Virus record (IMG/VR): IMGVR_UViG_3300045973_000169
Span: 1-64,000 of that record
Reading direction: 5' to 3' (one strand)
Length of the DNA stretch: 64,000 bases
Both the position numbers and the translations under genes were made by a program. Below the pieces are notes generated by a model. It was given only the letters and a program-made list of their open reading frames with translations. It did not search any database and had not been told where the DNA came from. Shown here one piece after another: positions 11,530 through 33,944 of the stretch (the first letter of the stretch is position 1; each line of letters opens with the position of its first letter).

Positions 11530-11538
11530 ATCACACCT

Positions 11539-11955: not shown

Positions 11956-11956
11956 A

Positions 11957-14053: not shown

Positions 14054-14359
14054 ATGAGTGACTTGATCATGGTAGTACTGGTAGAGTGGATCATGGTAGT
14101 GGGTGGGTACTGGTCAGTGGTACAGGGACAGGGGTACAGTGCATCGTGGTGTATACTGTTCGCTGTAGTAGCAGGTGTTGCTGCTGTATGCGTAGGTGTA
14201 TCAGAGAGGGCCAATGCGAGGTATTCTAAAGAGTTGATAGCTCGTATAGAGGAGAAACTCAAGGAAGAACACTACAATGTAACATCACTGTATAAAGGGG
14301 GGATGGACATAGCGTTTATGGAGCAGGAAGACATTAACAAGAAAGGGGAAAAATCATGA
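14054..14359 (+). CDS. Hypothetical membrane protein
   Basis: GGAGGA SD before ATG 14054; two hydrophobic segments. Confidence 0.55.
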   Translation: MSDLIMVVLVEWIMVVGGYWSVVQGQGYSASWCILFAVVAGVAAVCVGVSERANARYSKELIARIEEKLKEEHYNVTSLYKGGMDIAFMEQEDINKKGEKS

Positions 14360-14526
14360 GTATGTTCCTTATCAACAACGACAAAGTGAAGTACACGATG
14401 GATCAGGCCCTGGAGTTTGGGGAGATGTTGAAAGAGATGAATGGTGGCGGGCTTATCACTATTCGTCCATTGGCCTGTGGCGCTGGTTACGAAGTAAGTG
14501 TAGCATAACTAGAAAGGAGAAACAAA

Positions 14527-14838
14527 ATGAAAAAGAATAATCGCGGCTGGATCAGGGTATTCATTATGAGCATCGTCCTCTTGGCGATAGTACTCTGGCT
14601 TATCACCAGAGCTTTCCAGAAAGGCCACGTGTATTTCGATATGCGTGTTGACCCTTCGTTCGCGCAGACATCGTATCTTGGTGATACTCGGTTAGAATGC
14701 GAATGGACTGAAGGTGAGTCCTTCGCTAGATGCTACGATTCTATGACTGATCGAGGGAAACACAATCCAATACTGATAACCTTGACACCGGCGAAGCTCG
14801 AATGGTGCAGGAATGAGTTAATGAAAGGGAGGATGTAA
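14527..14838 (+). CDS. Hypothetical membrane-anchored protein
   Basis: AAGGAGA SD; N-terminal TM segment. Confidence 0.6.
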   Translation: MKKNNRGWIRVFIMSIVLLAIVLWLITRAFQKGHVYFDMRVDPSFAQTSYLGDTRLECEWTEGESFARCYDSMTDRGKHNPILITLTPAKLEWCRNELMKGRM

Positions 14839-14841
14839 ACT

Positions 14842-15447
14842 ATGAGAACTCTTATCTTTATCATACTGGGAGTACTGTTCGCTGATGTATTGGTTGGTTG
14901 TGGAGATAATGCAACTATCACTCAGCCTGAGCCTAAGCATACTGAGACCTATTCTATTACTACCATCAACACATCTCTCTCATCTGGGACTATTGTAGTT
15001 GAGGGCGGAAATAAAGAAATACATTGGGGTGAATCAAGAACTATCATTATCACTCCTAAACAGGGGATGAAGATCAACTCTGTTAGGTTAGATAATAAAG
15101 AGATATTACTACCAGGATCAGAGTTTGGGTTCTGTACAACGCTCACAGATATCAAAGAAGATTACATTATAACTGTCAGGTACTCATTTGATATCAAGTA
15201 CTATGACATAACAACAAGCTGCGGCCCTGGAGGAATCGTAGAGGTAAGGGGTGGACTAAGTACTCATATCGCTATGGGTAGCAACAGAGCAGTAGCTATT
15301 ATACCCTTTGCAGGGTATCGAATTAAGGTAATAAGAAAGGATGGTGAAGTAATAATCCCAGAAGATCCAAACACAGGCTATATGATTGTATTCACAGTCA
15401 TATCAACTTCACACAACATCAATGCAGAGTTCGAGGAGGTTAACTAA
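14842..15447 (+). CDS. Lipoprotein with two tandem InlB-B-repeat-like ('bacterial repeat') beta domains
   Basis: Lipobox LVGC; repeat Y.ITT....G.[IV].V.GG...I..G..R...I.P..G..I..[VI]R.D...I. Confidence 0.65.
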   Translation: MRTLIFIILGVLFADVLVGCGDNATITQPEPKHTETYSITTINTSLSSGTIVVEGGNKEIHWGESRTIIITPKQGMKINSVRLDNKEILLPGSEFGFCTTLTDIKEDYIITVRYSFDIKYYDITTSCGPGGIVEVRGGLSTHIAMGSNRAVAIIPFAGYRIKVIRKDGEVIIPEDPNTGYMIVFTVISTSHNINAEFEEVN

Positions 15448-15779
15448 TGGAAAAGCTTATTGGGTGGTTGATTGTGGCAGCAGGAGTGGAGTTTCGTGAG
15501 CTGGGGCAGTCTGCACAGCGTTGGACTGACATGGTGGCGATAGGTGGACGTTATCCTCTTGTTGCCTCACTGAATAAGGGCTTTGTTGTAGCTCGTATTC
15601 CCTGTATCATCAAGCAACAGGTGTCTGATGATATCATCATGGGTCAATTGGTCCCTCATACTGAACGCGATGAGGCGGCTAAAGGTGAAGAAACTTACTA
15701 TTACTATGAGATCCGTGATTACAATGTTAAGGATTTCAAGTACAACGATGCTGGTGATATCAGCATTGAACTCATCTAA
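15447..15779 (+). CDS. Hypothetical protein
   Basis: Coupled ORF. Confidence 0.55.
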   Translation: MEKLIGWLIVAAGVEFRELGQSAQRWTDMVAIGGRYPLVASLNKGFVVARIPCIIKQQVSDDIIMGQLVPHTERDEAAKGEETYYYYEIRDYNVKDFKYNDAGDISIELI

Positions 15780-15850
15780 CTGTAGTATCCGGCCAGATGG
15801 ACTCTACATCCATCTAAACTATCACTCTAACCAAACAAAGGAGAAACAAA

Positions 15851-16837
15851 ATGAAAACTATTATTATCATGCTTGCAGCAATTGAGTACGCAATTAACAT
15901 TGAAGATGGCGTTGCTATTACCGTGGAGAAGATCATGGATGCCCTCAGCAATAGGTTGGCTATTATCGATGGTATCCATAGCATCAATCCTAAAGGTAGC
16001 TGGATGCTCCCTGACCTCACGAGCCCTTACCCAAAGGAAAAGGGGGGAAGGACTTGGATGCGATTCACTGGGCTTAAGATCAAGAAGGAGAATGTCATCA
16101 CGCTTACTCCTAATGAGCAGAAATTATGGGAAGTTCGTGTCCAAAGCTGGTTAGACATAGCTAATGGGGTAACTACTAAGTTAGATCTTAGTTATGTTGT
16201 TACCCCTCCTGTTGTCCCCGAAGCTGATCGCCAGGATATCTTTACTGATAAGGATGGAACACAGTATCCTATTATATGGCATGCAAGCGCAAGAGGGCTT
16301 AATGCAAGGGTTGCATGGGAAGTAGAGTGCAGCAAGTGTACCACTAAGATTAAAGGCTATCGGCGTATTGCATCTAAGAATGGAGTGATCCCTGCTATTA
16401 CTGAACTTCAACCTTTCATGTGTGATGATGATGGTTGTGGTAATTCTGGCCGCAATTGGCTGTGCAAGGTACATATGCCATCGTTGGTTACTACAAACCA
16501 GTTGATCGAGGAAGCTCAGAAGCCTACATACATTGGGCAGATGAGTGTTAAACTCTTGAAGGAGCATTGCAAGGGTTTGGAAACACAGGTCCAGTTGGTC
16601 AAACAGCATGAAGAGCAGTACATCCAGGTTATTGACGAACTCGAGAAATCGGTTAAGCGTCTCGAGAAAGAGGTCCTGTCAATAGTCACCGCCAAGCAGA
16701 TGGTTGATGAGTTGGAGTCTTACTGTCAGACTCTGATTGTCAATCCTAACAAAGATGATGCTTCTGACCAGAAGATTGGGATCCTTGTCCGCTTGATTCA
16801 CCACTCAAGGGCTTGGATGTTGAAGGTGACGAAATAA
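15851..16837 (+). CDS. Hypothetical protein with CxxC motifs and a C-terminal coiled coil
   Basis: AAGGAGA SD; CSKC and CDDDGC motifs; heptad-rich tail. Confidence 0.65.
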   Translation: MKTIIIMLAAIEYAINIEDGVAITVEKIMDALSNRLAIIDGIHSINPKGSWMLPDLTSPYPKEKGGRTWMRFTGLKIKKENVITLTPNEQKLWEVRVQSWLDIANGVTTKLDLSYVVTPPVVPEADRQDIFTDKDGTQYPIIWHASARGLNARVAWEVECSKCTTKIKGYRRIASKNGVIPAITELQPFMCDDDGCGNSGRNWLCKVHMPSLVTTNQLIEEAQKPTYIGQMSVKLLKEHCKGLETQVQLVKQHEEQYIQVIDELEKSVKRLEKEVLSIVTAKQMVDELESYCQTLIVNPNKDDASDQKIGILVRLIHHSRAWMLKVTK

Positions 16838-17154
16838 TGGAAGAGACAGATCCTTGTACCCATTGTACACGCCCGTTCTGCTATGGGTGTGAATACCAAC
16901 TTAAAGGAGGTGATTAAAATGCCGTGGAGCTTGACCTACTTCTTCTTGTGTAGGCATTGTCACTATATGGATGAGATTCCTGCTCATTCATTGCCTGTAC
17001 ATGATGGTTGTCCCAAGTGTGGGGCAATCGGCTTCAGGAGACAGGTGCTTGAGGATGATCAGTTGGTTGATTTCAATCCTAAGAAGCATGTGAAGTAAAC
17101 AAACGTTCTGAGCAGGACGTTAAAAGGCTCATACTTAAATAGAGGAGATATATC

Positions 17155-20100
17155 ATGAGTAAGATCAATCGGAACCAATTGGTAACATTGGCCCAGCAGT
17201 TTGGTTTGTCATGGACTAAAAGCAAAACAATGTCATGCGATGATGTGTTGGCATTCATCGTTAAGGCTGGTGGTACTGTTGAAGAGGAACTTGACCGGTG
17301 CCATGAGCATGAAGCATTCGCAAAAGATGGCAAACTCTGCTCCTTGCTGCTCAAAGCAAAGGCAGAGAAAACAAAGGGCAAAGGCCCTAAAAAGGAGGCT
17401 CCTATGACCAAGGAGCATTACGACCCGATGGTGGAAATGAAGCGCCTTCTCGCTGAACAGGAGAAAGGTACGATTGTGACAACTGAGGAGCTGTTGACCT
17501 CTACGTCACCTACTGAGGTGAAAGATGTCAGGACAGGTAAACGCTTCACTCTGATCACTGGAGAGGAAGTCAATGCCTCTGAACAGGTAATGATGCCCGG
17601 TATCCTCGTTAAGCTGTACAAACAGGGTGAGGGTTTCATCATCCGTTTCGAGGATGGTGAGGTACCTATCGGTATCCATGCCATAAACAGGTATGGGGCT
17701 GCAACGATGAAGAATGAAGATGGGACTAATGTCTTCAAACTCATCCGCATTCAGCTCATTGACCCTCAGCTCAGGATCGAGGCTACCAAACAGTGCATCA
17801 GCAAGTTGCACGACCATGGGATGGAGAAGTATGGCCGTCCTCTGTACCCTATCTTCTGGCATTCCGATACCAAAGATATGAAGGGTCTCGTTGGCTTCAA
17901 AGAGGATTTCGATAAGCTGTTGGGTGTCGATATCTTTGCTGGCAAGGATCCGGTCAAGCTCATTGGCTATGATACTCCTACACGTATCATGGTGGCAAAC
18001 TGCACTAAGAACAGTCTCAGGTTCTTGGTTGTTAATCCTGTTGGCCCCAACGGTGAGGCTTACTGCGATGGGCAGGCATACATGAACTTCGAGTTCAAGT
18101 ACATCAAGTGGCTGTCCACAAAGGAAAAGGAAGCTGGGAAAGAGGCTCAGTGGAAGAAAGAGGATACCATGCAGTTCAGGTGCTTCTCTCCTCTGTTCAT
18201 GAAGGGTCAGCAGCTCCTTGGTTGGCAGTATGTCCACGATATCTGCCATTCGTACAACATCGAGAACTGGCAGGACTACGATGGTGTGGTCAACCTCGAT
18301 GTCATGAAGACTAACCCTAATGGCCTGAAACATGGGGATAGCTTCGAAGTCAATCCGATGGATATCAGTATCGTTAACATGATCACTGAGAATCCTTCAT
18401 CCTCTGCTGGTGTGCAGTTGGTCACTCACAAGCCAAGTGTTGTTTGTGCTTTGGCTGATGAGATGGGTGTTGCCGAGAACGGTAAGACCTTCCGTGGTAT
18501 TCTGGATGGCAATCTCGATGACGTCTATAAGATGCTCATGTCCTCCAAGGTTAAGTCCATGGAAGACTCTGACATCGCTCCTGCTATGTTCTTGGGTATG
18601 AGTGTACCCAATGGCAAGGGTAGCTGGCGTCCTCTCGCTATCAAGAGCATCAGGGATCGTGAAGCTGCTCGTATCACGAAGTTCTACCAGACTGATGTGC
18701 TCAAGATGCAGACGTCCGAGTTGGCTCTGTACTCCTGCGCTACACCGGTTATCATCAAGGATGCTAAAGGTAATCTCCGTGATTGCCTGTCAGTATTCGA
18801 GCGCTACACTCTGGAGAATGATGGGAATGCAGTTAACTATGTTATTCTCCCCGATGATATCGCTTTCATCCGCAAGTGGGTAGCCAAGAAGTGCAGGAAC
18901 TCGATGCGCCATCCGGTGGTTGGTATTGGTTCTATTCAGGAGGATACTAATCTCCCTAAGTATTTCGTCGATGAACTCATTCAGATGGGTTTCAAGTCCA
19001 TCTATACGATCAATGTGGATGGTGTCGATTATGCTGTCCATCCTGCTAAACACGGGATTCTTATCTCCTATGATCGGGCAATCGCTCAGAATGGGGACTT
19101 TGATGGTGATATGCAGTATTTCATCATCAGTGACACTGCCAAGTTCGGTGTTGCAAAGATGCCCGAGATCACCATCGACATGGAAGACACTGGCAAAGAG
19201 ATCGATGCCTACAACCACAACGTGTACCACAAGTTCCTGTTGTACAAGTATGTGCAGGTTATCAACTCTCAGCCTCTCATTGGCTTGGTTGACCTCTTGG
19301 TACGTCGTATCATCGAAGAGAATAGGCTCAACAACAAGGGTCTGTCCGTTGCTCAGTACATGAAGTTGGCTCTCATCAGGGAGTCCATGATTCAGGGCAG
19401 GAAGCATCTCACCGATGATATGGACTTGGATAACCCTCCATCCGTGGATGAGGTCTACAAGAACATCAGTGAGCGTTTGATTCGCACGTATCACTGGGCT
19501 GGGAAGATGAATCCCAAGGGTGCTGCTGCTCCTGCTACGCACAAGCTGAAAGTGTTTGGTGCATCTGGTACTGGCATCAGGGCAACTTCAAGCTTCCAGG
19601 CTGTTCAGAACATTGTTGAATTGGTTCCTACAGCCAAGCGCCAGCCTAATTACTCCTTGGACCCTTACTCCAAGGGCTGGGATGAACTGATTGGTGCTCA
19701 GTACATGTACCACAATGAGGATGCTGTTTACTGGATGACCAAGTTCGATACCCTTTGGACTGCTCTTCAGAAGGGCAATAGCACCATCCTCGGTGTTGAA
19801 GTATCTGCCAAGCGTATCATCAGTGTAGTTTCGTTCTGCCACTACTTGGTGTACGGTAACTCTGGCAAGACCTGGTTGGGTTACACTGCAAGTGCACGTG
19901 ACCTGCTCTCTATCAGGGATGAGAATGTTCAGCGTCAGGCATTCTTTGACCTCAACAAACAGATCGATGCTCTCGTTGCTGGATTCGTTGAGGAGCAGTG
20001 TGGTCTGGACCCTCACCGTCAGGATCTGCTCAAGAAGATGTTGACCATTTACTTGGGTAAGATTGGCTTCGGTGGTCGCTTGGGCAAGGGCATTTACACT

Positions 20101-20247
20101 CTGCCTGATAATGGTGGTATCATTGGTCATTCTGGTGGTTGCTTCTGGCGTATGAAAGCCAAGTACATCATCTGGGTTGCCAAACTCATCCATCCCAATA
20201 ACCCGATGCTGGACCGTCTCATCGACGATTACAACATCAAGATGTAG
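17155..20247 (+). CDS. Single-subunit double-psi-beta-barrel RNA polymerase (YonO / eukaryotic RdRP-like)
   Basis: Catalytic NGDFDGDMQY preceded by MRHP; upstream CDGQAY and QFR...MKG motifs in the same order as DG / QxR..KG / RxP / DxDGD in QDE-1-type polymerases; GAGGAG SD. Confidence 0.85.
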   Translation: MSKINRNQLVTLAQQFGLSWTKSKTMSCDDVLAFIVKAGGTVEEELDRCHEHEAFAKDGKLCSLLLKAKAEKTKGKGPKKEAPMTKEHYDPMVEMKRLLAEQEKGTIVTTEELLTSTSPTEVKDVRTGKRFTLITGEEVNASEQVMMPGILVKLYKQGEGFIIRFEDGEVPIGIHAINRYGAATMKNEDGTNVFKLIRIQLIDPQLRIEATKQCISKLHDHGMEKYGRPLYPIFWHSDTKDMKGLVGFKEDFDKLLGVDIFAGKDPVKLIGYDTPTRIMVANCTKNSLRFLVVNPVGPNGEAYCDGQAYMNFEFKYIKWLSTKEKEAGKEAQWKKEDTMQFRCFSPLFMKGQQLLGWQYVHDICHSYNIENWQDYDGVVNLDVMKTNPNGLKHGDSFEVNPMDISIVNMITENPSSSAGVQLVTHKPSVVCALADEMGVAENGKTFRGILDGNLDDVYKMLMSSKVKSMEDSDIAPAMFLGMSVPNGKGSWRPLAIKSIRDREAARITKFYQTDVLKMQTSELALYSCATPVIIKDAKGNLRDCLSVFERYTLENDGNAVNYVILPDDIAFIRKWVAKKCRNSMRHPVVGIGSIQEDTNLPKYFVDELIQMGFKSIYTINVDGVDYAVHPAKHGILISYDRAIAQNGDFDGDMQYFIISDTAKFGVAKMPEITIDMEDTGKEIDAYNHNVYHKFLLYKYVQVINSQPLIGLVDLLVRRIIEENRLNNKGLSVAQYMKLALIRESMIQGRKHLTDDMDLDNPPSVDEVYKNISERLIRTYHWAGKMNPKGAAAPATHKLKVFGASGTGIRATSSFQAVQNIVELVPTAKRQPNYSLDPYSKGWDELIGAQYMYHNEDAVYWMTKFDTLWTALQKGNSTILGVEVSAKRIISVVSFCHYLVYGNSGKTWLGYTASARDLLSIRDENVQRQAFFDLNKQIDALVAGFVEEQCGLDPHRQDLLKKMLTIYLGKIGFGGRLGKGIYTLPDNGGIIGHSGGCFWRMKAKYIIWVAKLIHPNNPMLDRLIDDYNIKM

Positions 20248-20769
20248 TATTGTCTCGTAGTATAATGGTTTGGTAGTAATATCCTTAAAACTACCAATAT
20301 ATTAGGAGGTAAGTATGTCAGACAGAATGTTTAAGCACGATATTTGTTTGCCAATAGGTGATTGCGATGATGATATAGGTGATTTCTTTAGTACTCTTGG
20401 CTGGGTTATTTATTTATCTATCCCAGCATTTGAAGGGATGGTTATCCAATTTGAGAATGGTGAACACTTAATGTTCTATGTTAAAGACATCATATACTCT
20501 TACTGGAAAAATACAGCTGTAATAACGCTAGTTAAATACAGAGGGAGTTGCTCCCCATACAAGAAAGGAGTATGATATGTCAAATAACTTACGTGAACGT
20601 TTTATTGAAACATATACGACATTATCTCTTTTAGTTAGAGAGTTTTATGGTGGTCGGCGTGTATCTAATAAAAGGAGGAAATCATGATTGAAGTTCACTT
20701 ATCGTTAATGGGGTGGTATTACGTTGTGATACCTATTTGTGCTAAAGTATCTGTTTATCTGATCTATTA

Positions 20770-21207
20770 ATGGAGGGTGATATGAGAAGGGGATATAAAC
20801 AACCTAAACTTGTTGATAAAGTTAAATCTCTTATTGAAGCAGATGCTATCTCATTAGATAGAGTTAGATGCTATGATAACTCTTTGGAGAGTATCCCAGC
20901 TAAAACAGGCAGGACATCCAGAACTCATGGGTTCGAACGTGTCATAATAGAGAGGAATCAGAAGCATCGTGTAAGGTTGAAGAAAGAAAAGAGAATGAAA
21001 GAGATATTTAAAAGGGGCAAGGAAGTCCTAGCAAAGCAAGGAAGTGATCACAACTGTATTAGGAGAGGTAAACGAACTTATAGTAAAGAAGAAGCTGATG
21101 TATATATTAAAGGTTACAAGCAAAAGAAACTTGGGAAATACTATTGTAAGAAGTGTAGAGGTTGGCATCTAACTTCTAAGCTGGAGGTGAGTAATGGTGA
21201 TACTTAG
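20770..21207 (+). CDS. Basic hypothetical protein with C-terminal YxCxxCxGWHLTS zinc motif
   Basis: The YYCKKCRGWHLTS motif is common in small phage proteins. Confidence 0.55.
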   Translation: MEGDMRRGYKQPKLVDKVKSLIEADAISLDRVRCYDNSLESIPAKTGRTSRTHGFERVIIERNQKHRVRLKKEKRMKEIFKRGKEVLAKQGSDHNCIRRGKRTYSKEEADVYIKGYKQKKLGKYYCKKCRGWHLTSKLEVSNGDT

Positions 21208-21714
21208 ATTCATATGGTTATCATTAATGGACCTATTCTTTCTATTCACTCAATTTAAATTAATAGGACTAATAGTATTCTTCCTATTGTTCTGTATTAT
21301 GTTCTACTTGAAGCGTAAATAGAATTTCATGGATTCTTCTGGAGTCATTCGAGAGAGTGGCTCCTAGAGAGTGCGCGAGCATTCTAACTGCAGTACACGT
21401 TACACCTGTTATACCTGTAGTTTACAAGTTACACCTGTTGTACCATAGTACCGTTTAACCGTTACACATTAGTAAATATACCGCTGCTCCAGTCCCCCTA
21501 AAGTCAAGGGCGTGGTGCTATTTGTTGTGTTGAGTTATTAAGTGAGTGATTGTGTTAGTTGTAGCATTGTAGACGTAAGTGTAGCATTTGTCCGAAGATG
21601 TCTTATCGTTGGTTAGTGTTCGTTCGTGGAGTCGTGTTAGTGTATGAAATTTTGAAATGGTGTTAGTGTTTGGCACCATTCAATAAAAAAAAACGTGTTA
21701 GGAAGGAGATTGTC

Positions 21715-22200
21715 ATGATTAAAAAGCGTTCCATGGTAGCAACTGTTGAGAGTCTCAAGACCGATTTCGTGAAGTTTGGTAGCAATGCTGCCATCCGCCA
21801 GATCGATATCAATCTTGGTGACCAGACCCGCATCCGCTGTAATGAAGGCGATGCACTGTTCGACTCTGTTGTAAAGTCCGTTCGCGGTGGCTGTACTCTG
21901 TCGTTCGACTATGCCGACATCCGTGAGGACAAGAAGACCGAGGCTTTGATTTCGGGCGGTACTGGTTCTGTTGGTTCCGGTTGGTTCACCGTGCATGGCG
22001 TCGAGATTACCGATGCGAAACCCGGCGAGATCAGCAAGTTGCTGGAAGAGCGTTTGGAAGCTGCTGCTGTTCCGCTGTCCTTCCCCGAGGCTCCGCGTGA
22101 AATCGTTACCGGTAAGACAAAGGGTGACATTGTTCCCGAGTACAAAGCTGGGGCACATGCTGAAGCCTCTGCTACTGGTGACACGGTTGAGAAGTTCTAG
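21715..22200 (+). CDS. Hypothetical protein, strongly codon-biased (likely highly expressed)
   Basis: AAGGAGA SD before ATG ~21715; GC-rich third codon positions. Confidence 0.65.
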   Translation: MIKKRSMVATVESLKTDFVKFGSNAAIRQIDINLGDQTRIRCNEGDALFDSVVKSVRGGCTLSFDYADIREDKKTEALISGGTGSVGSGWFTVHGVEITDAKPGEISKLLEERLEAAAVPLSFPEAPREIVTGKTKGDIVPEYKAGAHAEASATGDTVEKF

Positions 22201-23719
22201 CCTTTTGTGCTAGTGTACGATTTTGGTAGGGGTACCGAATCCCTGCAGAGGGATAGGATTGAGTTGCTAATCCCTATCAAACGGTAGAGGGGCCTCCATT
22301 GTTATGCATACAGTGGAGCCGAAAAGCCCCTCACCGTATTATTCTGTATCGAAGGAAGGAGAACTTAAACCAATGGTTATCGAAATTAAGAGTGACACCG
22401 TAGTCAGCTCAAATCGACCATGCCATGGATGTCGAAACTTCCAGTTTAGGAGAGTAACAACGGAAGAGACCGATCCTGAAGCTAGGATTGAGGCGCAACA
22501 ACTTACAAAAGAAACCTGTTTAACTTGTGGTATCACTCGACCACGAACTTCTTTAAAGATTTATAGAGTGAAAAGTCCACCTGAACGTCGAAAACAAGAA
22601 AGGGGATGATATTTTGAAAAACTTCTTTAAAAAAGTATTCAAGTATGGGTCCCTCTTTATTATGGGATATGCATTACACATACTTGTAGAGGCATTTGTT
22701 GTAACGAATATACTTGCTATGTTCGGGATGCATATTCCCGTTCTAGTATAAGGGGGTGAACTTATGATCCATCCCATACTTCTGGCTTTCATTTCTATGA
22801 TTGTTGGGAGTGTTGCACTCGTTATTACATTCGCTACAGGTCGTTGGTTCTTTAGGAACTTTATTGATCCACCCAACATGGAACTTGTTCGTGAGTTTAA
22901 CTCTTGTGTTGAAACTATAACTCGAGAACATCAACGTGGGAAACAACTCTATCGTAAATTCGGTACTGCTGAAATGAGAATCGCACAAAAGAATTGGGGT
23001 GCTGAAACACTTAGCACTTTCAAGTGAGGTGGTATATCATGCTCATGGTATTCTATGTTGGATTCGGAACTGGCATATTGTTTTATATCATTAAACTTGT
23101 CATGTTCTTTATTAGTACCCGTGGTTGGTTAAACTGGCTATGGAGATTAGCTCATCGTAATGGATTAGCTTTATTCATATTCGACTTTATATTCGGATTG
23201 ATAATCTCTAGTGCCATACACACTGCTGGAGCCGAAGGGTTAACTACCCTATTTGTATTTATCGGCTTCACTGTAAGCTCATGTTTTTACGTTATCACAC
23301 ACCTTAGTTGTCGAAAGGGAAAGGAGTTAGCATGCGCATTTGGCCGTTCGTATTAATGATGACAATGTGCATACTCTTCTTTGGTGTAATGTTCTTTGCA
23401 TTCTATAAGTTTATCATCCTCTTAATCGGGGCTGCTTGCTTTGCATGTGCAATGTTCGTAACACTTAAGGTCTGTATCCCATTTGTCAATTGGTGCTATG
23501 GTTTGAAACACAGAATTAAAGATTGTACTGGTAGATAGCGTTCGCGGACTGCCATCCTGAGAGATAGAGACTCTAAGTGCCAACTCAAAAAGGCATGTAC
23601 AGTTTCTTTGGCTGATATACGTGAACATACGCTAAATGATCCTATATTACGACTCTTGCCTGACTGGTCATCGGGTAAAAGCATATTTAGAGGATTAGTT
23701 CTACCAGTGCATTAAATAA

Positions 23720-23806
23720 GCCTCTATGGTGGAATTGGTAGACACAAGGGACTTAAAATCCCTCGACAGTAATGTCGTCCCAGTTCGACTCTGGGTAGGG
23801 GCACCA
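23720..23806 (+). tRNA. tRNA-Leu(TAA)
   Basis: GCCTCTA/TAGGGGC acceptor stem, D-loop GG, anticodon loop CTTAAAA, long variable arm, GTTCGAC T-loop, CCA end. Confidence 0.93.
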
Positions 23807-23828
23807 CTCTTACACGAAAGGAGATACA

Positions 23829-24032
23829 ATGAAACTGCCTAACATGACTAAGTTAAAAGACATCAAAGGGGAACCTATGTATGTTAATGCTGACAGGGTT
23901 ACTTCAGTTACTCTTGATGCAACGGGTACGAACACTGTCATCTGTCTTGATGGCAATGTCCAAGGCTTTTATGTCAAGGGTACGCCCGACGAAGTTGTTG
24001 CACTCATCGACGCTGCACATATCATCTCGTAG
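23829..24032 (+). CDS. Hypothetical small protein (FlbD-like pattern: KL...G.P.YVN.D.V...TVI)
   Basis: AAGGAGA SD; motif resemblance only. Confidence 0.5.
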   Translation: MKLPNMTKLKDIKGEPMYVNADRVTSVTLDATGTNTVICLDGNVQGFYVKGTPDEVVALIDAAHIIS

Positions 24033-24060
24033 TATAAACTCGCTTGAAAGGAGAATTACC

Positions 24061-24435
24061 ATGAACAAGAAAGAACAGGATGCATTCCTCCTTGCCTACA
24101 ATGGCAGGACATTCGAACAACTGACTGAAGCAAAGAAATCCGATTTCAGCGGAAAAGAAGACATCTACTTCGATATCATGAAAGCTAAGGGAGCTGATAA
24201 ACCTGCTGGTGCATCTACACTTATCGTCATGGGCCTGAAAAAGAAAGTCATCGACGGTGTTGTCGAATCCATCACCGGTCTCAAAGCAACTGGCGCTCAG
24301 GCTATCATCGAGTCTGATGCCGAGAAAGAAAAGAACGCCCTGCTGGAAGGTATCGCTGAAGCAACCAAAGACATGCCGCAACCTGCTGTAGCTGCCATGC
24401 TCAAAGCTTTGAACGATGCCAAACAGCACCCGTAA
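24061..24435 (+). CDS. Hypothetical protein
   Basis: AAGGAGA SD before ATG 24061; codon-biased. Confidence 0.6.
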   Translation: MNKKEQDAFLLAYNGRTFEQLTEAKKSDFSGKEDIYFDIMKAKGADKPAGASTLIVMGLKKKVIDGVVESITGLKATGAQAIIESDAEKEKNALLEGIAEATKDMPQPAVAAMLKALNDAKQHP

Positions 24436-25902
24436 CAATCCGCAAACCATGGAGGTTAGGTGTTAGTTTTGAATCTAACCTTCATGGTTGTAGTACACTT
24501 GAGGAACATATATTCTTCAGTGCATATTATATTACGAAAAGGAGCTTCAAATGTTTACCACAAAAACTTATTCCCGTCAAAAGCTTAAACAGTGTCGTAC
24601 TAAGATAGTATTACTCCTCGCAAGAAATCCTCGAACGTATAGTTCTGGAAGTGTCTCATCGTGATGTACATTCCTTGTATGTTTACTATTACTAAATTTT
24701 TTAGTTAAATTGTTAGATCCGACTCTTGTAAAAAGTTAGCCTTTTAATTTTGACATTTTTTGGAAACTTAATCAAATCAATAGCTTGTGTTAATTACGCA
24801 GAGATAGTATATTTAGTATCACTAAAAACTTCTATATGCGTATAACATGAGTATGATTGTATTTCTAATAGAAACTTATACCGTAACTTATTGATATTGT
24901 TAAATAAAGGGGGAATATGCATAAATTGTACAGTCACTGTTCTATTAATGTCTATTTCAAGTTGTCTCTATTTAGACTATAAACTTATTCCCAACTTATC
25001 CAAACTTATACTCATCTCACTCCACTATAATCACTTCTCTACAGAAACTTATTCCTTTCCTCGTCCTTACCCATCTAACTTAGTGTTATTGTTCGGAGTT
25101 ATCTTCCCACTGTATATAGGTGTTATTGTTTGGTGTTTAATCTATTATTTAAAAGGTGGTATTGTATGAAAAAGGTTATATTTGAAGAAGAAGTTAGTGA
25201 TACTGTTAAGTTTAATGATTGTAATATTCGTTCTCGGCCTATTGGAGTCCAAGTAGGTAATAAGAAATATTTTACTACTGATGCTGATATGAAAGATTCT
25301 GCTTATCAGTTAGTTGATCTTGATGAGAATTTTAAATTCGTCCTTGGTTCTTGTGTTAGAGGTCAGGATACTCAAAGCTTCCTTAAGGATATTAAGATTA
25401 AGTTTCCTCTTTGTCTTATTTATGAGTTTAATTCTTCTCGTGAATTGCTTGTTTGGTTACTTAAATAAAAGGGGTGTTATATGTTCTGGTTATTAGTTTG
25501 GTTTACTCTTGGTGTTATACCTTGGTTCTATGATATTAAGAAACATAAGGTTCTTGTTATAGGGGATATATTGTCTTTTATAATATGTGCGGCTTTCGGT
25601 CTCTTTGGTTTTATTTGGTTTGTTGTTCTCCTTAGTCGTGATGATAAGGTTTGTCTTGACAATCCATTTTATAAAAGGTGACCTATGTTCCCTATTCTTA
25701 TGAGCCTTGTTCTCTGGTATATTATAGGAGTTGTATTATCCTTGTATACATTCTCAATCAATGATTGTTCTGATAAGTATATTGACCCTGTTGTTTTTAT
25801 ACTTGCTTTACTTGGACCTTTTGTTATTGGGATGGTGTTCTTTGCTTTACTTGAACGTTATTTAAATCGTGTTAAAATTAAGAATCCATTTTGTAAAAGG
25901 AG

Positions 25903-26310
25903 ATGGTAGTGGAAAGACCTGAATTAATTAAGCATGGTGAGTCTTTCATTAAGTCAATGGAAGAGTTAGTTACTCATTACCTTGGGGCTGTTGAGCTTGG
26001 TATATCAAAGAATAATTATACTATTAAGTTTGGTAAACCCTGTTTATTGTGTAATCCTCTTGATTGTGATGAGAGTTATCATTCTGTAGTTGCTCCACCT
26101 TTTGATCATATGGCTAGCTGTGTTGCTCTTGGTTGTCCTTGGATAGTTATGACAGGTTTGACCTGTGATGGTTATTATAAGACATTAAGTAATCCTAGTG
26201 TTACATACTTAGGGCCTATTTATCATTCAACTGATAAAGCATATCAGATGTTTCGTGTTATCCAGTTACGTGAATGGATAGCTGCATATAAAAAATACTT
26301 TGGAGTGTAA
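25903..26310 (+). CDS. Cys-rich paralog family member (CxLC...CPWxxxTGxxC)
   Basis: Motif shared with 27008, 29996 and 59355. Confidence 0.6.
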   Translation: MVVERPELIKHGESFIKSMEELVTHYLGAVELGISKNNYTIKFGKPCLLCNPLDCDESYHSVVAPPFDHMASCVALGCPWIVMTGLTCDGYYKTLSNPSVTYLGPIYHSTDKAYQMFRVIQLREWIAAYKKYFGV

Positions 26311-27007
26311 GGAGCTTGTATGGATTTAGTATATGAGCTTGATCGTATTATATTCATCATTAACCGTGATGGACCTGATGAAGGTAAGAAGTTTGCTAAA
26401 CGTATAACTAAAATATATCTTGATACATGTAAGGGATTTCGTAAGAAGTTTCATTCAAGATATCATCCTATGCGTTATGCATATATTCAATCAGCTTGGT
26501 CAGCCAGGTATATATTAAGAGAGATGTTGTGAAGTGTAAGAAGTGTCATTCTGTCCTTGATGGTAAGTGGTGTTGGAGCTGTATGAAATTTGAATGGGAG
26601 ATATAATATGTCATTTAATGTCTTTAAACCAGTTCGTAAAAATGTTGATCCTAAGCTTTGGATAGAGTGGAAGAAGTTGAGAGACATTGAGCAGAAGATG
26701 AGACAGAGTATTATTACTCTTGATGCTATTAAGGAAGATACATGTGATTTTGAAGTTGCATGTGATTCTGTTGTTGAGTTGATGAATAAACTATCTAAAA
26801 GGATGGGTTCATAATATGGCTATTATCTGTAATTGCAGGAAGTGTGGTACGCTTGTTGAGATAGCTGAGTTTATTGATACTAAGGCTGGTGTTAAGGATT
26901 TAGTTAAAGCTACTTGTCATGGTGAGACTCAACCTTTATCAGTTACTGGACATCGTAATCTTGATGGATCTGATGTTGTTTTAAATTTCTTTTAAGAAAG
27001 GTGGAAT

Positions 27008-27349
27008 ATGACTACTAAAGAAAAGATCAATATAGAAAAGATAATTGAAGCTCTCTTATTGTTACGTTCGTATTATGAACGTTCTATTAAAGGCAATGTA
27101 TCATATGCTCTCTATCTTTATGGTAATGATCTTGAATGTCCATTGTGCGATGCTATGTGTGACATTTATGGTTATATAAACTGTAAGCAATGCCCTTGGG
27201 CAGTTATGACTGGCTTGCCTTGTTGTGAATTATCGGATGGTCCTTCAAAGAATCTTTTTACTCGTATAAGTAATGATCCTGATGTTAAGCAAGCTCGTAT
27301 TAATGAAATTGATGAATGGATTGAGTTTTACTCAAATCTAACTAATTAA
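27008..27349 (+). CDS. Cys-rich paralog family member
   Basis: CPLC...CKQCPWAVMTGLPC. Confidence 0.6.
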   Translation: MTTKEKINIEKIIEALLLLRSYYERSIKGNVSYALYLYGNDLECPLCDAMCDIYGYINCKQCPWAVMTGLPCCELSDGPSKNLFTRISNDPDVKQARINEIDEWIEFYSNLTN

Positions 27350-27370
27350 TTAAGAAAGGAGAAGCATAGT

Positions 27371-28618
27371 ATGGCTAAGTTTATCCGTTTCAATGGTTGG
27401 GACAAAAGAGATTTAGAATGTATGTATGCTAATCCTGGTTATAGTAGTGGTATGGCTGATACTTATAGTGAAAGTGATAAAGATTTACATTATGAGTATG
27501 ATCCAAGTAAGAAGAAAGCTATACCTGCTGTTGAGCTTGAAGAGAGATTTAAAATTATCATTGATTCAACTGTTGTCTGTATGCTTGGTGTTGCTAAACA
27601 AATGACTCATAAATCTGTTTGTATTATATATGGCAGAGATATGTATCCTGTTTGTGAAGTTATCCGAGTGTTAGGATATAAGTTAAGAGGGACTTATATC
27701 TATATTGAAGGTGCTTCAAGATATACTTCTTCTGAAGAAGTTTTCAGGAAAAGATTTGCTGATGAGTTCAGTCCTATTTTTGAAAAGGCTGATAAGGTTA
27801 TTGGCTTTGATACTGGTTATCAAGGTACAATTCCAAGTAATATGATTAGAAAGAATCCTCATATTGCTAAATCAGTTAAAGATAAACATGTAATAAGGCT
27901 GATGGCTGCTACATCTGATCCTAAAGAGCATTGTATCTTTAGGGATTATATAGACACAGATAGCCAGTATCATTGGAAAAATGTAGTTAGTTATCTTGAA
28001 GACTTTTATAAGCCTATTACAAGGCCGACTAGAGTCTATAAGAATATGCCTATTCTGAATGTTGCTGATAAAGAATCTATTGAGAAAACATATGCTCTCT
28101 TGGGTTTAATAGCAGCTAAATGTAAAGAATTAGAGCCTATACTGTCTTATCTTCTGCATCCAGAAATTGATATAGTTGATGAATTACTTTCCTTAAAGAA
28201 AAAAGTTGAAGTTAAGCTGGAAGAAAAGAAAGAAGAAGCTAAAACTGATATTGATCCATTATTTAAACCAGGGGTTAAGGTTAAACTAAAAGAATCATCT
28301 AAATATTATGACCAATATAAAAAATATGGTGATCATTCTTTTGGTGTTATTCAAGAAGATTCTTGTGATACGTCTTGGGTTGAAGTTAAATGGCCTATAG
28401 ATAATCAGGAGTTTTGTTATCCAAAAGAAGATCTTATCATTGTAAATGGATTTGCTGTTGGTGATAAGATTAAGCCTAAAGCTAATGCCCCTTATTTAAT
28501 GATTGTTGGTTCATGGAGAGGAGAGGTTATTGGCGTAGATAGTGATATGTGCTCTGATAAACTTCAAGTAAGTGGTGGATATTTTGTTGATGAAGATTTT
28601 TTTGAATTAGATATTTAA
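27371..28618 (+). CDS. Hypothetical protein (415 aa) with C-terminal SH3/KOW-like repeats
   Basis: AAGGAGA SD; FKPGVKVKLK and FAVGDKIKPK repeat starts. Confidence 0.6.
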   Translation: MAKFIRFNGWDKRDLECMYANPGYSSGMADTYSESDKDLHYEYDPSKKKAIPAVELEERFKIIIDSTVVCMLGVAKQMTHKSVCIIYGRDMYPVCEVIRVLGYKLRGTYIYIEGASRYTSSEEVFRKRFADEFSPIFEKADKVIGFDTGYQGTIPSNMIRKNPHIAKSVKDKHVIRLMAATSDPKEHCIFRDYIDTDSQYHWKNVVSYLEDFYKPITRPTRVYKNMPILNVADKESIEKTYALLGLIAAKCKELEPILSYLLHPEIDIVDELLSLKKKVEVKLEEKKEEAKTDIDPLFKPGVKVKLKESSKYYDQYKKYGDHSFGVIQEDSCDTSWVEVKWPIDNQEFCYPKEDLIIVNGFAVGDKIKPKANAPYLMIVGSWRGEVIGVDSDMCSDKLQVSGGYFVDEDFFELDI

Positions 28619-28684
28619 GCAAAGGAGCTTAGTAAATGAAAACGCATGGCTTGTAACTGTAACGGAATGTGGAATATATAACGA

Positions 28685-28978
28685 TTAGTCATCTTATATA
28701 GGAAACATAGGATTGCAGTATAAAGATCTTGTCTAATTTGATTAGCGGTGTGATGGCCGAAGGGTAAGATGTGGAAGAGAGCGATACTCTCCTATGAGGG
28801 CTTATATATTATTAGACAATATACATCATTAGGATTCCTGTAATTTGATCAATTGTGGGGCCTAGACAAACATATATGGATGTAGAGCGATATGCTCGTA
28901 GCTTAGGCTATTAGACAGCATGCAGATACCGTATATGGACTAACTCTGTCTTAGAGAATTGGTGACATAAACTCTAAG
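28685..28978 (+). ncRNA. Putative structured non-coding RNA
   Basis: ORF-free; nested helices TTAGTC/GACTAA and TTGTCTAAT/ATTAGACAA, two GAGCGATA-containing hairpins, GU-rich hairpin at 28830-28864. Confidence 0.5.
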
Positions 28979-28993
28979 TAAAAATAAAAAATG

Positions 28994-29021
28994 TTGACAA
29001 TTAAACTGAAAGGTAGATACT
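28994..29021 (+). promoter_or_regulatory. Sigma70-type promoter
   Basis: TTGACA-16 nt-GATACT with an A-rich UP element upstream. Confidence 0.55.
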
Positions 29022-29995
29022 GTCATGAATTCAGACTCTTCGTAGCTTGAGATTGTAACTTTATTTTATACTTATATGATTATACTATTGGATATATTAT
29101 TGGAAGAATTAGGAGATTATAGGAGCTAGCATACCTTCTTAGATATCGACGGATATCAGTATGCTATATAGAGTAAAGTACATATTGTGTATTTTATTGT
29201 GTATATCAAATTGAAAGGATATTATCATGGCTTATACGTTATCTCAGATTGAAAATGAAATTTTAGTTTCAATTAAAGCAAAGATTCCATCGTTGTTAGG
29301 TATAGTTAGTAAGGATAGATATCAAGAGAAGATTGATAAAGCTGCTAATATAATAGAGGTTCTTATTGCACATATAAGAAAACTCGATAGAAACATTGCT
29401 TTATTAGAACTTGATAAGAAATATAGTTTATCTAAACAAAAATCTAAAGTTAAGTCTGATTCTGCTGAACGAGCATTTGATAATGATGTTCGTAAGGAAT
29501 GGGCTAAACGAGTAGTTCGTGATATGCCTAAATTAACAACTGAAAATGTATTAAATCTTGTACGCTCTGCTTATATAGAGGGTTATAAGAAAGGAGAATA
29601 ATATGCTTGAATTTATACTTGGGTTAGCATTTCTTGTAGCTCTAGGATGTATTGCATTTGGACTGTTTGCATTTTATCATAACTTCTCTTCATTTTGTAA
29701 CTGGGGTATGGTATTGCTAATAACAATTGGTATCATAATTATATTCATTGACACTGTTCATAGTCTTGGAGTTATCGTATTAAAGGTCTTTGGATAGTAT
29801 GTCTGAATTTGCCATGAAGTATTTAGCATTCGTTATTATGTTATTGATTGGGGTTGAATGCTCTGTAATGAATACAAAAGATAAGGATGCATTACAATCA
29901 GTTATATCGTTTGTTGCATTAATAGTTTATGTTGTTATTTATATCATAAAGAAAGGTGTTATTGTTTGGCACCTATTTAGCTAAGGAGAATAAAC

Positions 29996-30826: not shown

Positions 30827-30911
30827 GGGGTTGTAGCGGATCGGCCTTCTAAGCCGTGCACATAACACCGTAATGGATCGCATGCTGGTTCGAATCCAGT
30901 CAGCCCCTCCA
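30827..30911 (+). tRNA. Atypical D-armless tRNA-Arg(TCT)-like RNA
   Basis: GGGGTTG/CAGCCCC acceptor stem, CGGC-CTTCTAA-GCCG anticodon arm, GCTGG-TTCGAAT-CCAGT T arm, CCA. No D arm; long variable region. Confidence 0.7.
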
Positions 30912-33885: not shown

Positions 33886-33944
33886 AATTTTAAGATAGCT
33901 TAAACGGTAGAGTATTACAGTTATTAACATGTAAGATACAATAC

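What the first reader, a model, noticed from the sequence alone, without database searches (positions are those of the whole stretch)
21656..29974. Recurrent GTGTTA(G/T)TGTT(T/C)GG motif: candidate phage-RNAP promoter or operator
Seen: copies at 21660-21673, 25083-25096, 25120-25133 and 29956-29969, plus a one-mismatch copy at 61277-61290. All lie shortly upstream of gene starts. At 21656 and 29954 the motif sits in covarying hairpins (AATGGTG/CACCATT versus AGGTG/CACCT), and GTGTTAG also caps the 24446-24489 hairpin. Inference: a promoter, possibly hairpin-type as for N4 vRNAP, or a regulator site for the phage RNAP.
Basis: partly seen in the sequence, partly recalled or inferred. Interest (0 to 1): 0.6.

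Follow-up and report, generated by a model that had tools for sequence, protein, structure and literature searches.

The report
Conserved promoter-like motif in jumbo phage
A 14-base motif found five times in front of genes of an uncultured 207-kb pond phage is real, belongs to a family of elements conserved in related phages that share a new single-chain RNA polymerase, and is most likely a promoter, though no transcript data exist to prove it.

Summary
GTGTTAKTGTTYGG occurs four times exactly and once with one mismatch, always on the + strand (0.1 expected). There are no further copies in the 206,638-bp genome. Each copy ends 26-41 nt before an ATG; one extra copy lies 37 nt upstream of another.

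The "phage RNAP" exists. ORF 17155-20247 has an invariant DxDGD signature, and its AlphaFold model matches QDE-1, crAss-like gp66 and P23-45-type gp64, so it is a single-chain two-barrel RNA polymerase.

Seven metagenomic relatives carrying this polymerase (24-56% identity) have their own versions of the motif, with core TG(C/T)TA(T/G)(T/C), often followed by GG. These are enriched only on the coding strand, mostly downstream of the polymerase gene. They cluster in the long leader of a conserved 160-aa gene and beside a conserved iteron array.

The hairpin idea is weak: only 2 of 5 copies fold, and about 4 of 35 across the family. A separate, commoner motif, GTTAWTAACA (about 28 sites, before structural operons and homing-endonuclease genes), is probably the late promoter.

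Best reading: a start-site-proximal promoter of a non-late class, probably read by the phage polymerase. A host extended -10 promoter (TGnTAnnnT) or an RNA-level or regulator site remain possible. No RNA data exist.

The parts
21660..21673 (+). Motif copy 1 (GTGTTAGTGTTTGG). It lies in the loop and stem of hairpin 21656-21680, 41 nt before ATG 21715.
25083..25096 (+). Motif copy 2 (GTGTTATTGTTCGG), the upstream member of a tandem pair. AACTTA lies directly 5' of it. No hairpin.
   Evidence: (repeat D8)
25120..25133 (+). Motif copy 3 (GTGTTATTGTTTGG), 32 nt before ATG 25166, the first gene after the iteron region. No hairpin.
29956..29969 (+). Motif copy 4. It lies inside the 3' end of small ORF 29799-29984, in hairpin 29954-29974, 26 nt before ATG 29996.
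61277..61290 (+). Motif copy 5 (GTGTTATGGTTTGG, one mismatch), 26 nt before ATG 61317.
21515..21701 (+). Cluster of degenerate copies of the core TG(C/T)TA(G/T)T at 21516, 21553, 21635 and 21696, in the 507-nt leader of gene 21715-22200. The 21635 copy (TGTTAGTGTATGAAAT) is the one conserved in position in L011, L012 and L010.
22714..22727 (+). Probable degenerate copy (TTGCTATGTTCGGG), 49 nt before ATG 22764.
24446..24489 (+). Strong hairpin directly after the stop of gene 24061-24435. Its loop holds a partial motif (GTGTTAGTTTTG). It looks like a terminator but has no T run.
17155..20247 (+). Single-chain two-barrel RNA polymerase gene (P0001, 1030 aa) with RHPVVGIGS...NGDFDGD.
21715..22200 (+). 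Conserved 161-aa gene (P0002) behind the motif cluster. Orthologues in L011, L010 and L012 are all preceded by motif clusters. There is a weak lead to an OB-fold, SSB-like protein.
21480..21503 (+). Conserved box (ACCGCTGCTCCAGTCCC...) at the head of the motif cluster. It is shared with L011, L010 and L012.
24564..25053 (+). Iteron array (A/G)AAACTTAT(T/A)CC with at least 5 full copies, directly upstream of the tandem motif pair. It is conserved in L010, L011, L015 and L017.
13182..24435 (+). GC-rich (43-49%) first + strand module. It holds the polymerase gene and motif copy 1. L010 has the same layout.
33920..33929 (+). Example of the separate, commoner motif GTTATTAACA (class A). Other window sites are 12905(-), 31269(-), 51396(+) and 60544(+).

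Best explanation
The motif is the window's version of a family-conserved, strand-specific cis element with core TG(C/T)TA(T/G)(T/C), here extended to GTGTTAKTGTTYGG. It most likely acts at the DNA level as the start-site-proximal part of a promoter for a small, non-late class of transcription units: 21715->, 25166-> (tandem pair), 29996-> and 61317->. The most likely reader is the phage's own single-chain two-barrel RNA polymerase (17155-20247). That enzyme would first be made from the host-transcribed GC-rich module, as in the T7 and P23-45 scheme. GTTAWTAACA would then be the separate late-class promoter. Shown: the motif's non-randomness, its position, its family conservation, and the polymerase fold. 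Inferred: that it is a promoter, and which polymerase reads it.
For: There are five copies against 0.1 expected, all on the + strand, and none elsewhere in 207 kb. IMG/VR contigs carry the 14-mer only singly. The motif ends 26, 26, 32 and 41 nt before ATGs that have Shine-Dalgarno sequences. That leaves no room for a further -10 element, so any start site must lie within about 12 nt of the motif. The same 26-32 nt spacing occurs at L010 13068, L011 7423 and L012 4633. The tandem pair is the only conserved element between a terminator-like hairpin plus iteron array and the first AT-rich gene, and no sigma-70-like site was found on the + strand there. The genome encodes exactly one RNA polymerase-like protein. 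It has invariant D648/D650/G651/D652, P587, K350 and K385. Its AF2 model has pLDDT 84 and hits QDE-1 at E 6e-12, gp66 at 8.5e-7 and gp64-type at 1.5e-6. In seven relatives with this polymerase, TGYTAKY-N3-5-GG is enriched on the + strand downstream of the polymerase gene. Observed against simulated counts are L010 11 vs 0.32, L011 4 vs 0.48, L012 3 vs 0.14, L014 5 vs 0.28, L015 6 vs 0.91, L016 2 vs 0.23 and L017 7 vs 0.95. The - strand has 0-1 hits. There is no excess upstream in the window, L010 or L017. Orthologues of gene 21715-22200 all have motif clusters in their leaders. T at the position equivalent to -7 is kept in only 23 of 35 family copies (listing), which is low for a sigma-70 -10 element.
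Against: There is no transcript or start-site evidence: the only public run holding this DNA is the source pond metagenome. The family pattern was derived after seeing the relatives, so the enrichment tests are partly circular. L015 also shows some excess upstream of the polymerase gene (4 vs 0.8). All five window copies fit the host extended -10 rule TGnTAnnnT. The core is unchanged across polymerases only 24-27% identical, whereas T7-like promoters drift with their polymerase (my own knowledge, not tested here). In L012 one copy (4377) abuts a Shine-Dalgarno sequence, leaving no leader. Some copies lie in hairpin loops or in a long conserved leader, which would also suit an RNA-level role. 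GTTAWTAACA is an equally good or better candidate for the polymerase's promoter.
Confidence: 0.45

Rival explanations
1. The motif is a host-polymerase early or middle promoter of the extended -10 type, with no -35 element. T2-G3 would be -15/-14, A6 would be -11 and T10 would be -7. The extra conserved bases would tune strength or bind a phage factor. The phage polymerase would then read only GTTAWTAACA.
For: All five copies fit TGnTAnnnT (sequence). A purine lies 6 nt after the putative -7 T in 5 of 5 copies (contexts). GTTAWTAACA lacks a T at the -7 equivalent, so it is the motif that looks non-host. It precedes structural operons and homing-endonuclease genes, which matches YonO transcribing late genes in SPbeta (PMC5467207). 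The unchanged core across very divergent polymerases fits recognition by a conserved host sigma factor.
Against: T at -7 is kept in only 23 of 35 family copies. The motif is missing from the divergent gap and the genes upstream of the polymerase, which must be host-transcribed. Fourteen near-invariant positions is more than an extended -10 element needs. Sigma-70-like sites are under-represented in 20-32 kb: 31 found against 45.8 in shuffles. The host is unknown.
Confidence: 0.25
2. The motif is an RNA-level element or a regulator binding site, not a promoter. Repeated UGYUAKU units in leaders, some shown in hairpin loops, would bind a phage protein that controls translation, stability or antitermination. 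One candidate is the OB-fold-like product of 21715-22200, in the manner of T4 gene 32 autoregulation. Alternatively, a DNA-binding regulator could recognise direct TGTT(A/T) repeats.
For: Motif clusters sit in a long, sequence-conserved leader of one conserved gene in at least four genomes. The motif lies in hairpin loops at window 21660, 24460 and 29956 and at L010 13068. The motif is a direct repeat of TGTTA/TGTTT, and class A is an inverted repeat of the same half-site, which suggests one protein with two binding modes. P0002 gives weak OB/SSB-like structural hits and has an acidic tail ending in F.
Against: Most copies are unstructured. The copies sit 26-41 nt upstream of the ATG, outside the usual ribosome footprint. 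The OB-fold lead rests on TM about 0.4 for a low-confidence model. No regulator gene was identified.
Confidence: 0.2
3. The motif is an N4-type hairpin promoter, extruded from supercoiled DNA and read by an injected polymerase.
For: Two copies and one partial copy lie in hairpins, with one compensatory pair between them. L010 13068 lies in a GGGGAG/CTCCCC hairpin.
Against: Three of five copies have no hairpin. Loops are 5-11 nt, not 3. No T7/N4-like polymerase was detected. The hairpin before the L011 orthologue lacks the motif.
Confidence: 0.05
4. The motif is a relic of duplicated or mobile regulatory cassettes, or a by-product of composition, with no function of its own.
For: The 25066-25100 and 25103-25137 units are a 35-nt tandem duplication at 71% identity. 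The + strand is G+T-rich.
Against: The flanks of the other copies do not align. The motif shows conservation of type and position in seven relatives. Shuffles that keep dinucleotide content give 0.1 copies.
Confidence: 0.05

Closest known systems
Promoters of the two-barrel polymerases of Thermus phage P23-45 (gp96 virion and gp64 non-virion; bioRxiv 10.1101/2022.12.01.518664)
   Same: The phage encodes single-chain two-barrel polymerases, and the P0001 model hits the gp64-type fold. Short class-specific motifs lie upstream of gene starts, and those motifs are shared by relatives that carry the enzyme.
   Different: In P23-45 the start sites were mapped and the polymerases located by ChIP. The motif sequences there (AT-rich and GC-rich) are unrelated to this one. 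P23-45 has two polymerases; here only one was found.
YonO of Bacillus prophage SPbeta and YonO-like enzymes of jumbo phages 0305phi8-36 and c-st (PMC5467207, PMC7824862)
   Same: It is a non-virion-type single-chain two-barrel polymerase in a large tailed phage. The terminase here is distantly related to that of 0305phi8-36. The YonO promoter sequence is still undefined according to PMC5467207.
   Different: tblastn of P0001 against 50,697 phage records, which should include these phages, gave no match at E up to 10. YonO starts one late operon from a single site. Here there are five or more sites in the early half of the genome.
T7-type promoter cascade
   Same: In the window and 6 of 7 relatives there is no excess of the motif before the polymerase gene, and copies begin downstream of it, 20 nt after its stop in L010. 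The element is conserved, strand-specific and close to gene starts, and most copies end in GG.
   Different: The T7 polymerase has a Pol I-like fold and a 23-bp promoter. Here the element is about 14 bp with a 7-bp family core.
Sigma-70-family extended -10 promoters
   Same: The TGnTAnnnT pattern is present in all five window copies, and there is no -35 element.
   Different: The T at -7 is not kept across the family (23 of 35). There is extra invariant sequence. The motif is absent from the region that must be transcribed first.
N4 virion-polymerase hairpin promoters
   Same: Some copies are in hairpins upstream of early-side genes.
   Different: The hairpin is not obligatory, the loop size is wrong, and the polymerase is of a different kind.
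T4 gene 32 autoregulatory leader and T4 early promoter stem-loop cassettes (from my own knowledge, not checked in the library)
   Same: There is a long leader with repeated short units before a possible ssDNA-binding protein gene, and there are hairpin-plus-promoter units between small early genes.
   Different: No sequence relation. The SSB assignment here is only a lead.

Membership tests
N4-type hairpin promoter | Every site is an inverted repeat giving a 5-7 bp stem with a 3-nt loop. | tested here: not met
   Only 2 of 5 copies fold, and about 4 of 35 across the family. Loops are 5-11 nt.
N4-type hairpin promoter | The genome encodes a giant T7-like virion RNA polymerase. | tested here: inconclusive
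   PF00940 found nothing, but the control rang nowhere either. The four giant virion-type proteins show only SLT and tail-tip domains. The only polymerase-like protein is a two-barrel enzyme.
Sigma-70 extended -10 promoter | TG lies one base upstream of a TAnnnT hexamer. | tested here: met
   All five window copies read TG-T-TA(K)T(G)T.
Sigma-70 extended -10 promoter | A at -11 and T at -7 are nearly invariant among functional sites. | tested here: inconclusive
   A is kept in all copies, but the T at -7 in only 23 of 35 family copies (listing). Some copies may be non-functional.
Sigma-70 extended -10 promoter | Transcripts start 6-8 nt downstream and are read by host holoenzyme. | not testable with these tools
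   No RNA run holds this DNA, and the host is unknown.
Promoter of a phage-encoded RNA polymerase | The genome encodes its own RNA polymerase. | tested here: met
   P0001 has an invariant DxDGD motif. Its AF2 model has pLDDT 84 and matches QDE-1, gp66 and gp64-type folds at E 6e-12 to 1.5e-6.
Promoter of a phage-encoded RNA polymerase | The motif is strand-specific, lies before genes, and is absent from the region transcribed before the polymerase is made. | tested here: met
   The exception is L015, which shows some excess upstream (4 vs 0.8).
Promoter of a phage-encoded RNA polymerase | The motif is present only where the polymerase is present. | tested here: inconclusive
   All seven relatives with the polymerase have the motif family. 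No relative without the polymerase was available as a control.
Promoter of a phage-encoded RNA polymerase | Rifampicin-resistant transcripts start at a fixed distance from the motif. | not testable with these tools
   No RNA data.
Two-barrel single-chain RNA polymerase (assignment of P0001) | There is a DxDGD metal-binding loop preceded by an R-x-P segment in one double-psi barrel. | tested here: met
   RHPVVGIGS is at 585-593 and NGDFDGD at 646-652. D648, D650, G651, D652 and P587 are invariant in 26 sequences. These align motif-to-motif with the phiKZ beta'-like chain 7ogp_A, although the E-value is only 1.4.
Two-barrel single-chain RNA polymerase (assignment of P0001) | A second barrel supplies conserved basic residues. 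| tested here: inconclusive
   K350, K385 and R342 are invariant, but their place in the model's active site was not inspected.
Operator of a dimeric repressor | The site has two-fold (palindromic) symmetry. | tested here: not met
   The motif is a direct repeat TGTTA-K-TGTTY, not a palindrome (sequence). Class A is the near-palindrome.

The most novel reading that the evidence does not exclude
The TGYTAK-type motif is the cognate promoter of a previously undescribed clade of single-chain two-barrel (QDE-1/YonO-like) phage RNA polymerases. It would be recognised without a sigma factor, possibly through the enzyme's N-terminal Rho_N/SAP-like segment. GTTAWTAACA, an inverted arrangement of the same TGTTA half-site, would be a second promoter class read by the same enzyme at a later time. 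This would be the first sequence-defined promoter pair for a YonO-like enzyme of a jumbo phage.
Probability: 0.25. Interest if true: 0.75.

Novelty: new member of a known kind. Interest (0 to 1): 0.55.

Why it matters
Single-chain two-barrel RNA polymerases such as YonO, crAss gp66 and P23-45 gp64/gp96 are thought to resemble the ancestor of all cellular RNA polymerases. How they find promoters is largely unknown: the YonO promoter was left undefined (PMC5467207), and gp66 early transcripts showed no common motif (10.1101/2020.03.07.982082). This phage group offers a compact 1030-aa enzyme together with two short, sharply defined and family-conserved candidate promoter motifs. Promoter recognition by such an enzyme therefore becomes directly testable in vitro, even though the host is not cultured. 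If the motif turns out to be an ordinary host-type promoter, the finding is routine phage annotation.

Tried and rejected
- **Close relatives in GenBank phages:** none found. Megablast hit only a tRNA, and the terminase is at most 28% identical.
- **The search for related loci:** queries with the genes next to the motif gave nothing. The terminase gave only a 7-kb fragment.
- **Other polymerases or sigma factors:** PF00940, Rpb1_2, Rpb2_6 and Sigma70_r2 gave no match. The PF00940 control was uninformative. A weak Sigma70_r4 hit at 81.6 kb is the C-terminal helix-turn-helix of a GIY-YIG homing endonuclease, not a sigma factor.
- **P0001 by sequence:** Pfam, PHROGs, PDB sequence search and tblastn against phages were all blank.
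- **First AlphaFold run:** with 4 sequences it failed (pLDDT 39.5). The run with 26 sequences succeeded.
- **RNA evidence:** only the source pond DNA run holds the stretch. Read laying was therefore not used, because contigs of the source sample cannot show starts.
- **Exact motif in relatives:** absent. Only the relaxed family core is shared.
- **Bacteroidota -7 element (TAnnTTTG):** fits L015 copies but not the window (one base too long). The strong Shine-Dalgarno usage also argues against such a host.
- **MotA-box-like -30 element:** rejected, because 26 nt to the ATG leaves no room for a separate -10.
- **AR9-type AACA(N6)TW reading of class A:** positions 16-17 are not conserved.
- **Literature:** a search for the motif strings found nothing relevant.
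- **IMG/VR scan for the 14-mer:** only single, apparently chance hits.
Full report
**Observation**

The pattern GTGTTAKTGTTYGG has four exact copies (21660, 25083, 25120, 29956) and one copy with one mismatch (61277). All are on the + strand. Dinucleotide-preserving shuffles give 0.10 copies, and none of 100 shuffles reached five.

The window is the first 64 kb of a 206,638-bp IMG/VR virus record. The rest of the genome has no further copy at up to one mismatch. A weight matrix built from the five copies scores them 26.9-29.0 bits, and the next best site in the genome scores 18.1. The exact 14-mer does occur by chance in many IMG/VR contigs, but once in each of the 80 listed.

With my own gene calls, the motif ends 41, 32, 26 and 26 nt before the ATGs at 21715, 25166, 29996 and 61317. 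Each of these ATGs has a Shine-Dalgarno sequence. The 25083 copy is the upstream member of a 37-nt tandem pair.

**Hairpins**

The strong hairpin at 24446-24489, right after the stop of gene 24061-24435, carries a partial motif in its loop.

The 25083, 25120 and 61277 copies do not fold in this way. The claimed covariation is one compensatory pair beside a shared GGTG/CACC stem.

Among about 35 copies of the motif family in the window and three relatives, only four sit in a hairpin loop. In relative L011 the hairpin in front of the orthologous gene is kept, but it has a different stem and no motif in the loop. The hairpin is therefore a separate, occasional companion and not part of the element.

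**Genome context**

The genome is about 32% GC. It has no close relative among 50,697 GenBank phage records. It comes from a pond metagenome, which is the only public run that holds it, and no RNA run does.

- The - strand carries structural genes at 1-12.9 kb and 126-206 kb.
- The + strand runs from 13 to 126 kb and holds small ORFs, NAPRTase, RNA ligase, a split DnaE, RecA, primase-helicase, RNR and 19 tRNAs.
- The first + strand module, 13.2-24.4 kb, is 43-49% GC.

**The polymerase**

ORF 17155-20247 (P0001, 1030 aa) lies in the GC-rich module. It gave nothing in Pfam, PHROGs, the PDB sequence search or tblastn against phages. It does contain RHPVVGIGS followed by NGDFDGD.

The word search found three homologues. 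A profile search of 1.84 billion representatives found only about 30 clusters. In a 26-sequence alignment, D648, D650, G651, D652, P587, K350, K385, Q340 and R342 are invariant. The profile aligns these two signatures with the beta'-like chain of the phiKZ non-virion polymerase, though the score is not significant (E 1.4).

AlphaFold2 with the 26-sequence alignment gave pLDDT 84 and pTM 0.78. Foldseek against the PDB returned:

| Match | E-value |
|---|---|
| QDE-1 (TM 0.41-0.47) | 6e-12 |
| Plant RDR2 | 2e-7 |
| crAss-like phi14:2 gp66 | 8.5e-7 |
| P23-45-type gp64 polymerases | 1.5e-6 |

No other protein in the genome carries such a signature. No T7-like, beta/beta' or sigma region 2 match was found.

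**Relatives**

I fetched seven contigs that encode homologues of P0001: L010, L011, L012, L013/L014, L015, L016 and L017. They share the window's layout where the contig is long enough to see each part:

- structural genes on the - strand;
- a divergent gap;
- small + strand genes leading to the polymerase (in L010, where I profiled it, a GC-richer module);
- a conserved gene of about 160 aa behind a long non-coding leader;
- an AT-rich gap with (A/G)AAACTTAT iterons.

The exact window motif is absent from these contigs, but each has its own version:

| Locus | Local version of the motif |
|---|---|
| L012 | AATGCTATTGTA, 4-6 copies, 34-37 nt apart |
| L010 | TGCTATTTTGGG and GTGCTATTGTGTGGG |
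| L011 | GTGCTAGTGTTGG and similar |
| L014 | RTGCTATCAATGG |
| L015 | TGCTATTTTTGGG and TGTTATTGTTGG |
| L017 | GTGTTATTTRTGG |

The shared core is TG(C/T)TA(T/G)(T/C), often followed 3-5 nt later by GG.

I compared counts of that pattern with first-order Markov simulations. It is enriched on the + strand downstream of the polymerase gene in all seven. Observed against simulated: 11 vs 0.32, 4 vs 0.48, 3 vs 0.14, 5 vs 0.28, 6 vs 0.91, 2 vs 0.23 and 7 vs 0.95. The - strand has 0-1 hits. There is no excess upstream in the window, L010 or L017. L015 has some excess upstream. The pattern was derived after looking at these sequences, so the tests are supportive and not independent.

The gene behind window copy 1 (P0002, 21715-22200) has orthologues at 66%, 32% and 36% identity in L011, L010 and L012. 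Each is preceded by a motif cluster and a shared box (window 21480-21503).

Several copies in relatives end 26-32 nt before an ATG, as in the window.

**A second, commoner motif**

K-mer enrichment in upstream regions revealed GTTA(T/A)TAACA. It has 19 exact sites and about 9 one-mismatch sites, 10-40 nt before ATGs on the coding strand of both gene blocks. These include structural operons (12905, 130214, 179085, 200736) and many homing-endonuclease genes.

It is a near-palindrome (TGTTA-W-TAACA), yet it is directional, because the base before G is almost never T. It is conserved letter for letter in the divergent gaps of L010, L014 and L017.

Its distribution is that of a late or general phage promoter.

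**Mechanism**

With only 26 nt between the motif and the ATG, of which about 14 are Shine-Dalgarno sequence and spacer, there is no room for another promoter element downstream. If the motif is a promoter, it must be the start-proximal element.

The tandem pair at 25.1 kb is the only conserved element between a terminator-like hairpin with its iteron array and the first AT-rich gene. The consensus scan found no sigma-70-like site on the + strand there. These points, the strand specificity and the conservation of type and place across the family make a promoter the best reading.

Two readers are possible.

- **The phage polymerase.** In favour: the motif is absent from the region that must be transcribed first. 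It begins after the polymerase gene, 20 nt after its stop in L010. The T at the -7 equivalent is poorly kept (23 of 35). It has more invariant positions than a -10 element needs.
- **The host polymerase.** In favour: all five window copies read TGnTAnnnT. The core does not change across polymerases that are only 24-27% identical. GTTAWTAACA is the motif that looks non-host and sits before late genes, matching the late role of YonO (PMC5467207).

An RNA-level or regulator-site role is kept alive by the long conserved leader of P0002, by the few loop-displayed copies, and by a weak OB-fold/SSB-like lead for P0002.

I put a promoter of any kind at about 0.7. Of that, the phage-polymerase reading is 0.45 and the host reading 0.25. 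RNA or regulator element is 0.2, and the N4-type hairpin and no function are 0.05 each.

**Comparison with known systems**

The nearest studied case is Thermus phage P23-45. There, two two-barrel polymerases use two unrelated short motifs that were mapped by cappable-seq and ChIP (10.1101/2022.12.01.518664).

For YonO the promoter was left undefined (PMC5467207). For crAss-like gp66 no common upstream motif was seen (10.1101/2020.03.07.982082). YonO-like enzymes are known in the jumbo phages 0305phi8-36 and c-st (PMC7824862), and the terminase here is distantly related to that of 0305phi8-36.

The motif strings themselves do not appear in the searched literature in any relevant context. The element is thus a new member of a known kind, a class-specific phage promoter candidate, attached to a new clade of a rare polymerase type.

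**Limits**

- All function is inferred from sequence, and no start site is known.
- Gene calls are my own simple caller.
- The host is unknown.
- The relatives are metagenomic fragments.
- The family pattern is post hoc.

Noticed in passing
window 17155-20247: A 1030-aa single-chain two-barrel RNA polymerase (NGDFDGD; fold like QDE-1, gp66 and gp64). It belongs to a family of only about 30 clusters among 1.84 billion representatives. Some members carry an N-terminal Rho_N-like segment.
   Followed up: yes
whole genome, e.g. window 12905(-), 31269(-), 33920(+), 51396(+), 60544(+); G000 67858, 76390, 81125, 82189, 86443, 88560, 111283, 130214(-), 179085(-), 200736(-): GTTA(T/A)TAACA is a directional near-palindrome lying 10-40 nt before about 28 ATGs, including structural operons and homing-endonuclease genes. 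It is conserved exactly in L010, L014 and L017 and is probably the late or main phage promoter.
   Followed up: partly
window 24564-25053; L010 17538-17975; L011 7866-8450; L015 12349-12833: An array of (A/G)AAACTTAT(T/A)CC iterons sits in a 730-nt gene-free gap between the GC-rich module and the AT-rich genes. It is conserved in sequence and place in relatives. It may be a replication origin or another protein-binding array.
   Followed up: partly
window 13182-24435; L010 about 5000-17000: The first + strand module is 43-49% GC in a 32% GC genome, with different codon usage, and L010 shows the same. Early genes may be tuned to the host before the phage's 19 tRNAs are made.
   Followed up: partly
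window 21480-21503 and the 21208-21714 leader: A conserved box (ACCGCTGCTCCAGTCCC...) and a sequence-conserved 330-500 nt leader precede the P0002 gene in four genomes. This could be a structured RNA or a composite control region.
   Followed up: partly
window 21715-22200: P0002 is a conserved 161-aa protein with weak OB-fold/SSB-like structural neighbours (TM about 0.4) and an acidic C-terminal tail ending in F, as in SSB tails.
   Followed up: partly
window 15782, 20244, 20257, 22743, 24029, 24490; L010 4841, 5039, 5591, 5798, 7919, 9579: Genes of the GC-rich module tend to end in TAG followed by TA(C/T), giving a recurring (C/G)TAGTAY string between genes. It may be a stop-codon context or a further signal.
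   Followed up: partly
window 13113-13146; L014 about 1105-1135: GGGACCC...CGGAACCCCGG is conserved in the leader of the first + strand gene. G/T-rich TTTGG repeats lie upstream of it in the divergent gap.
   Followed up: no
G000 104718-105890 and 107539-109893: The DnaE (Pol III alpha) gene is split into two ORFs about 1.6 kb apart. The intervening sequence was not examined and may be an intron or a homing element.
   Followed up: no
G000 81160-81759 and 82229-82999; window 30912-31253(-), 33960-34460: There are many homing-endonuclease genes (GIY-YIG, and HNH-like ones with CxxC starts), each behind a GTTATTAACA site.
   Followed up: partly
window 30827-30908: Rfam calls a tRNA here (33 bits) that ARAGORN does not report. 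ARAGORN finds tRNA-Leu at 23720-23806 and tRNA-Met at 31323-31397.
   Followed up: no
L011 3231-3920; L017 13052-14020: In two relatives the gene next to the polymerase encodes a protein with a bacterial RNA polymerase alpha C-terminal domain, plus a helix-turn-helix in L011. No such gene was found in the window.
   Followed up: partly
L014 about 2360-2430 and 7620-7690: Cassettes of a GGAG...CTCC hairpin followed by TTGA(C/G)AAACAAT-N4-TATAAT stand before two genes of the distant relative. The 11-nt spacing is not canonical for sigma-70.
   Followed up: no
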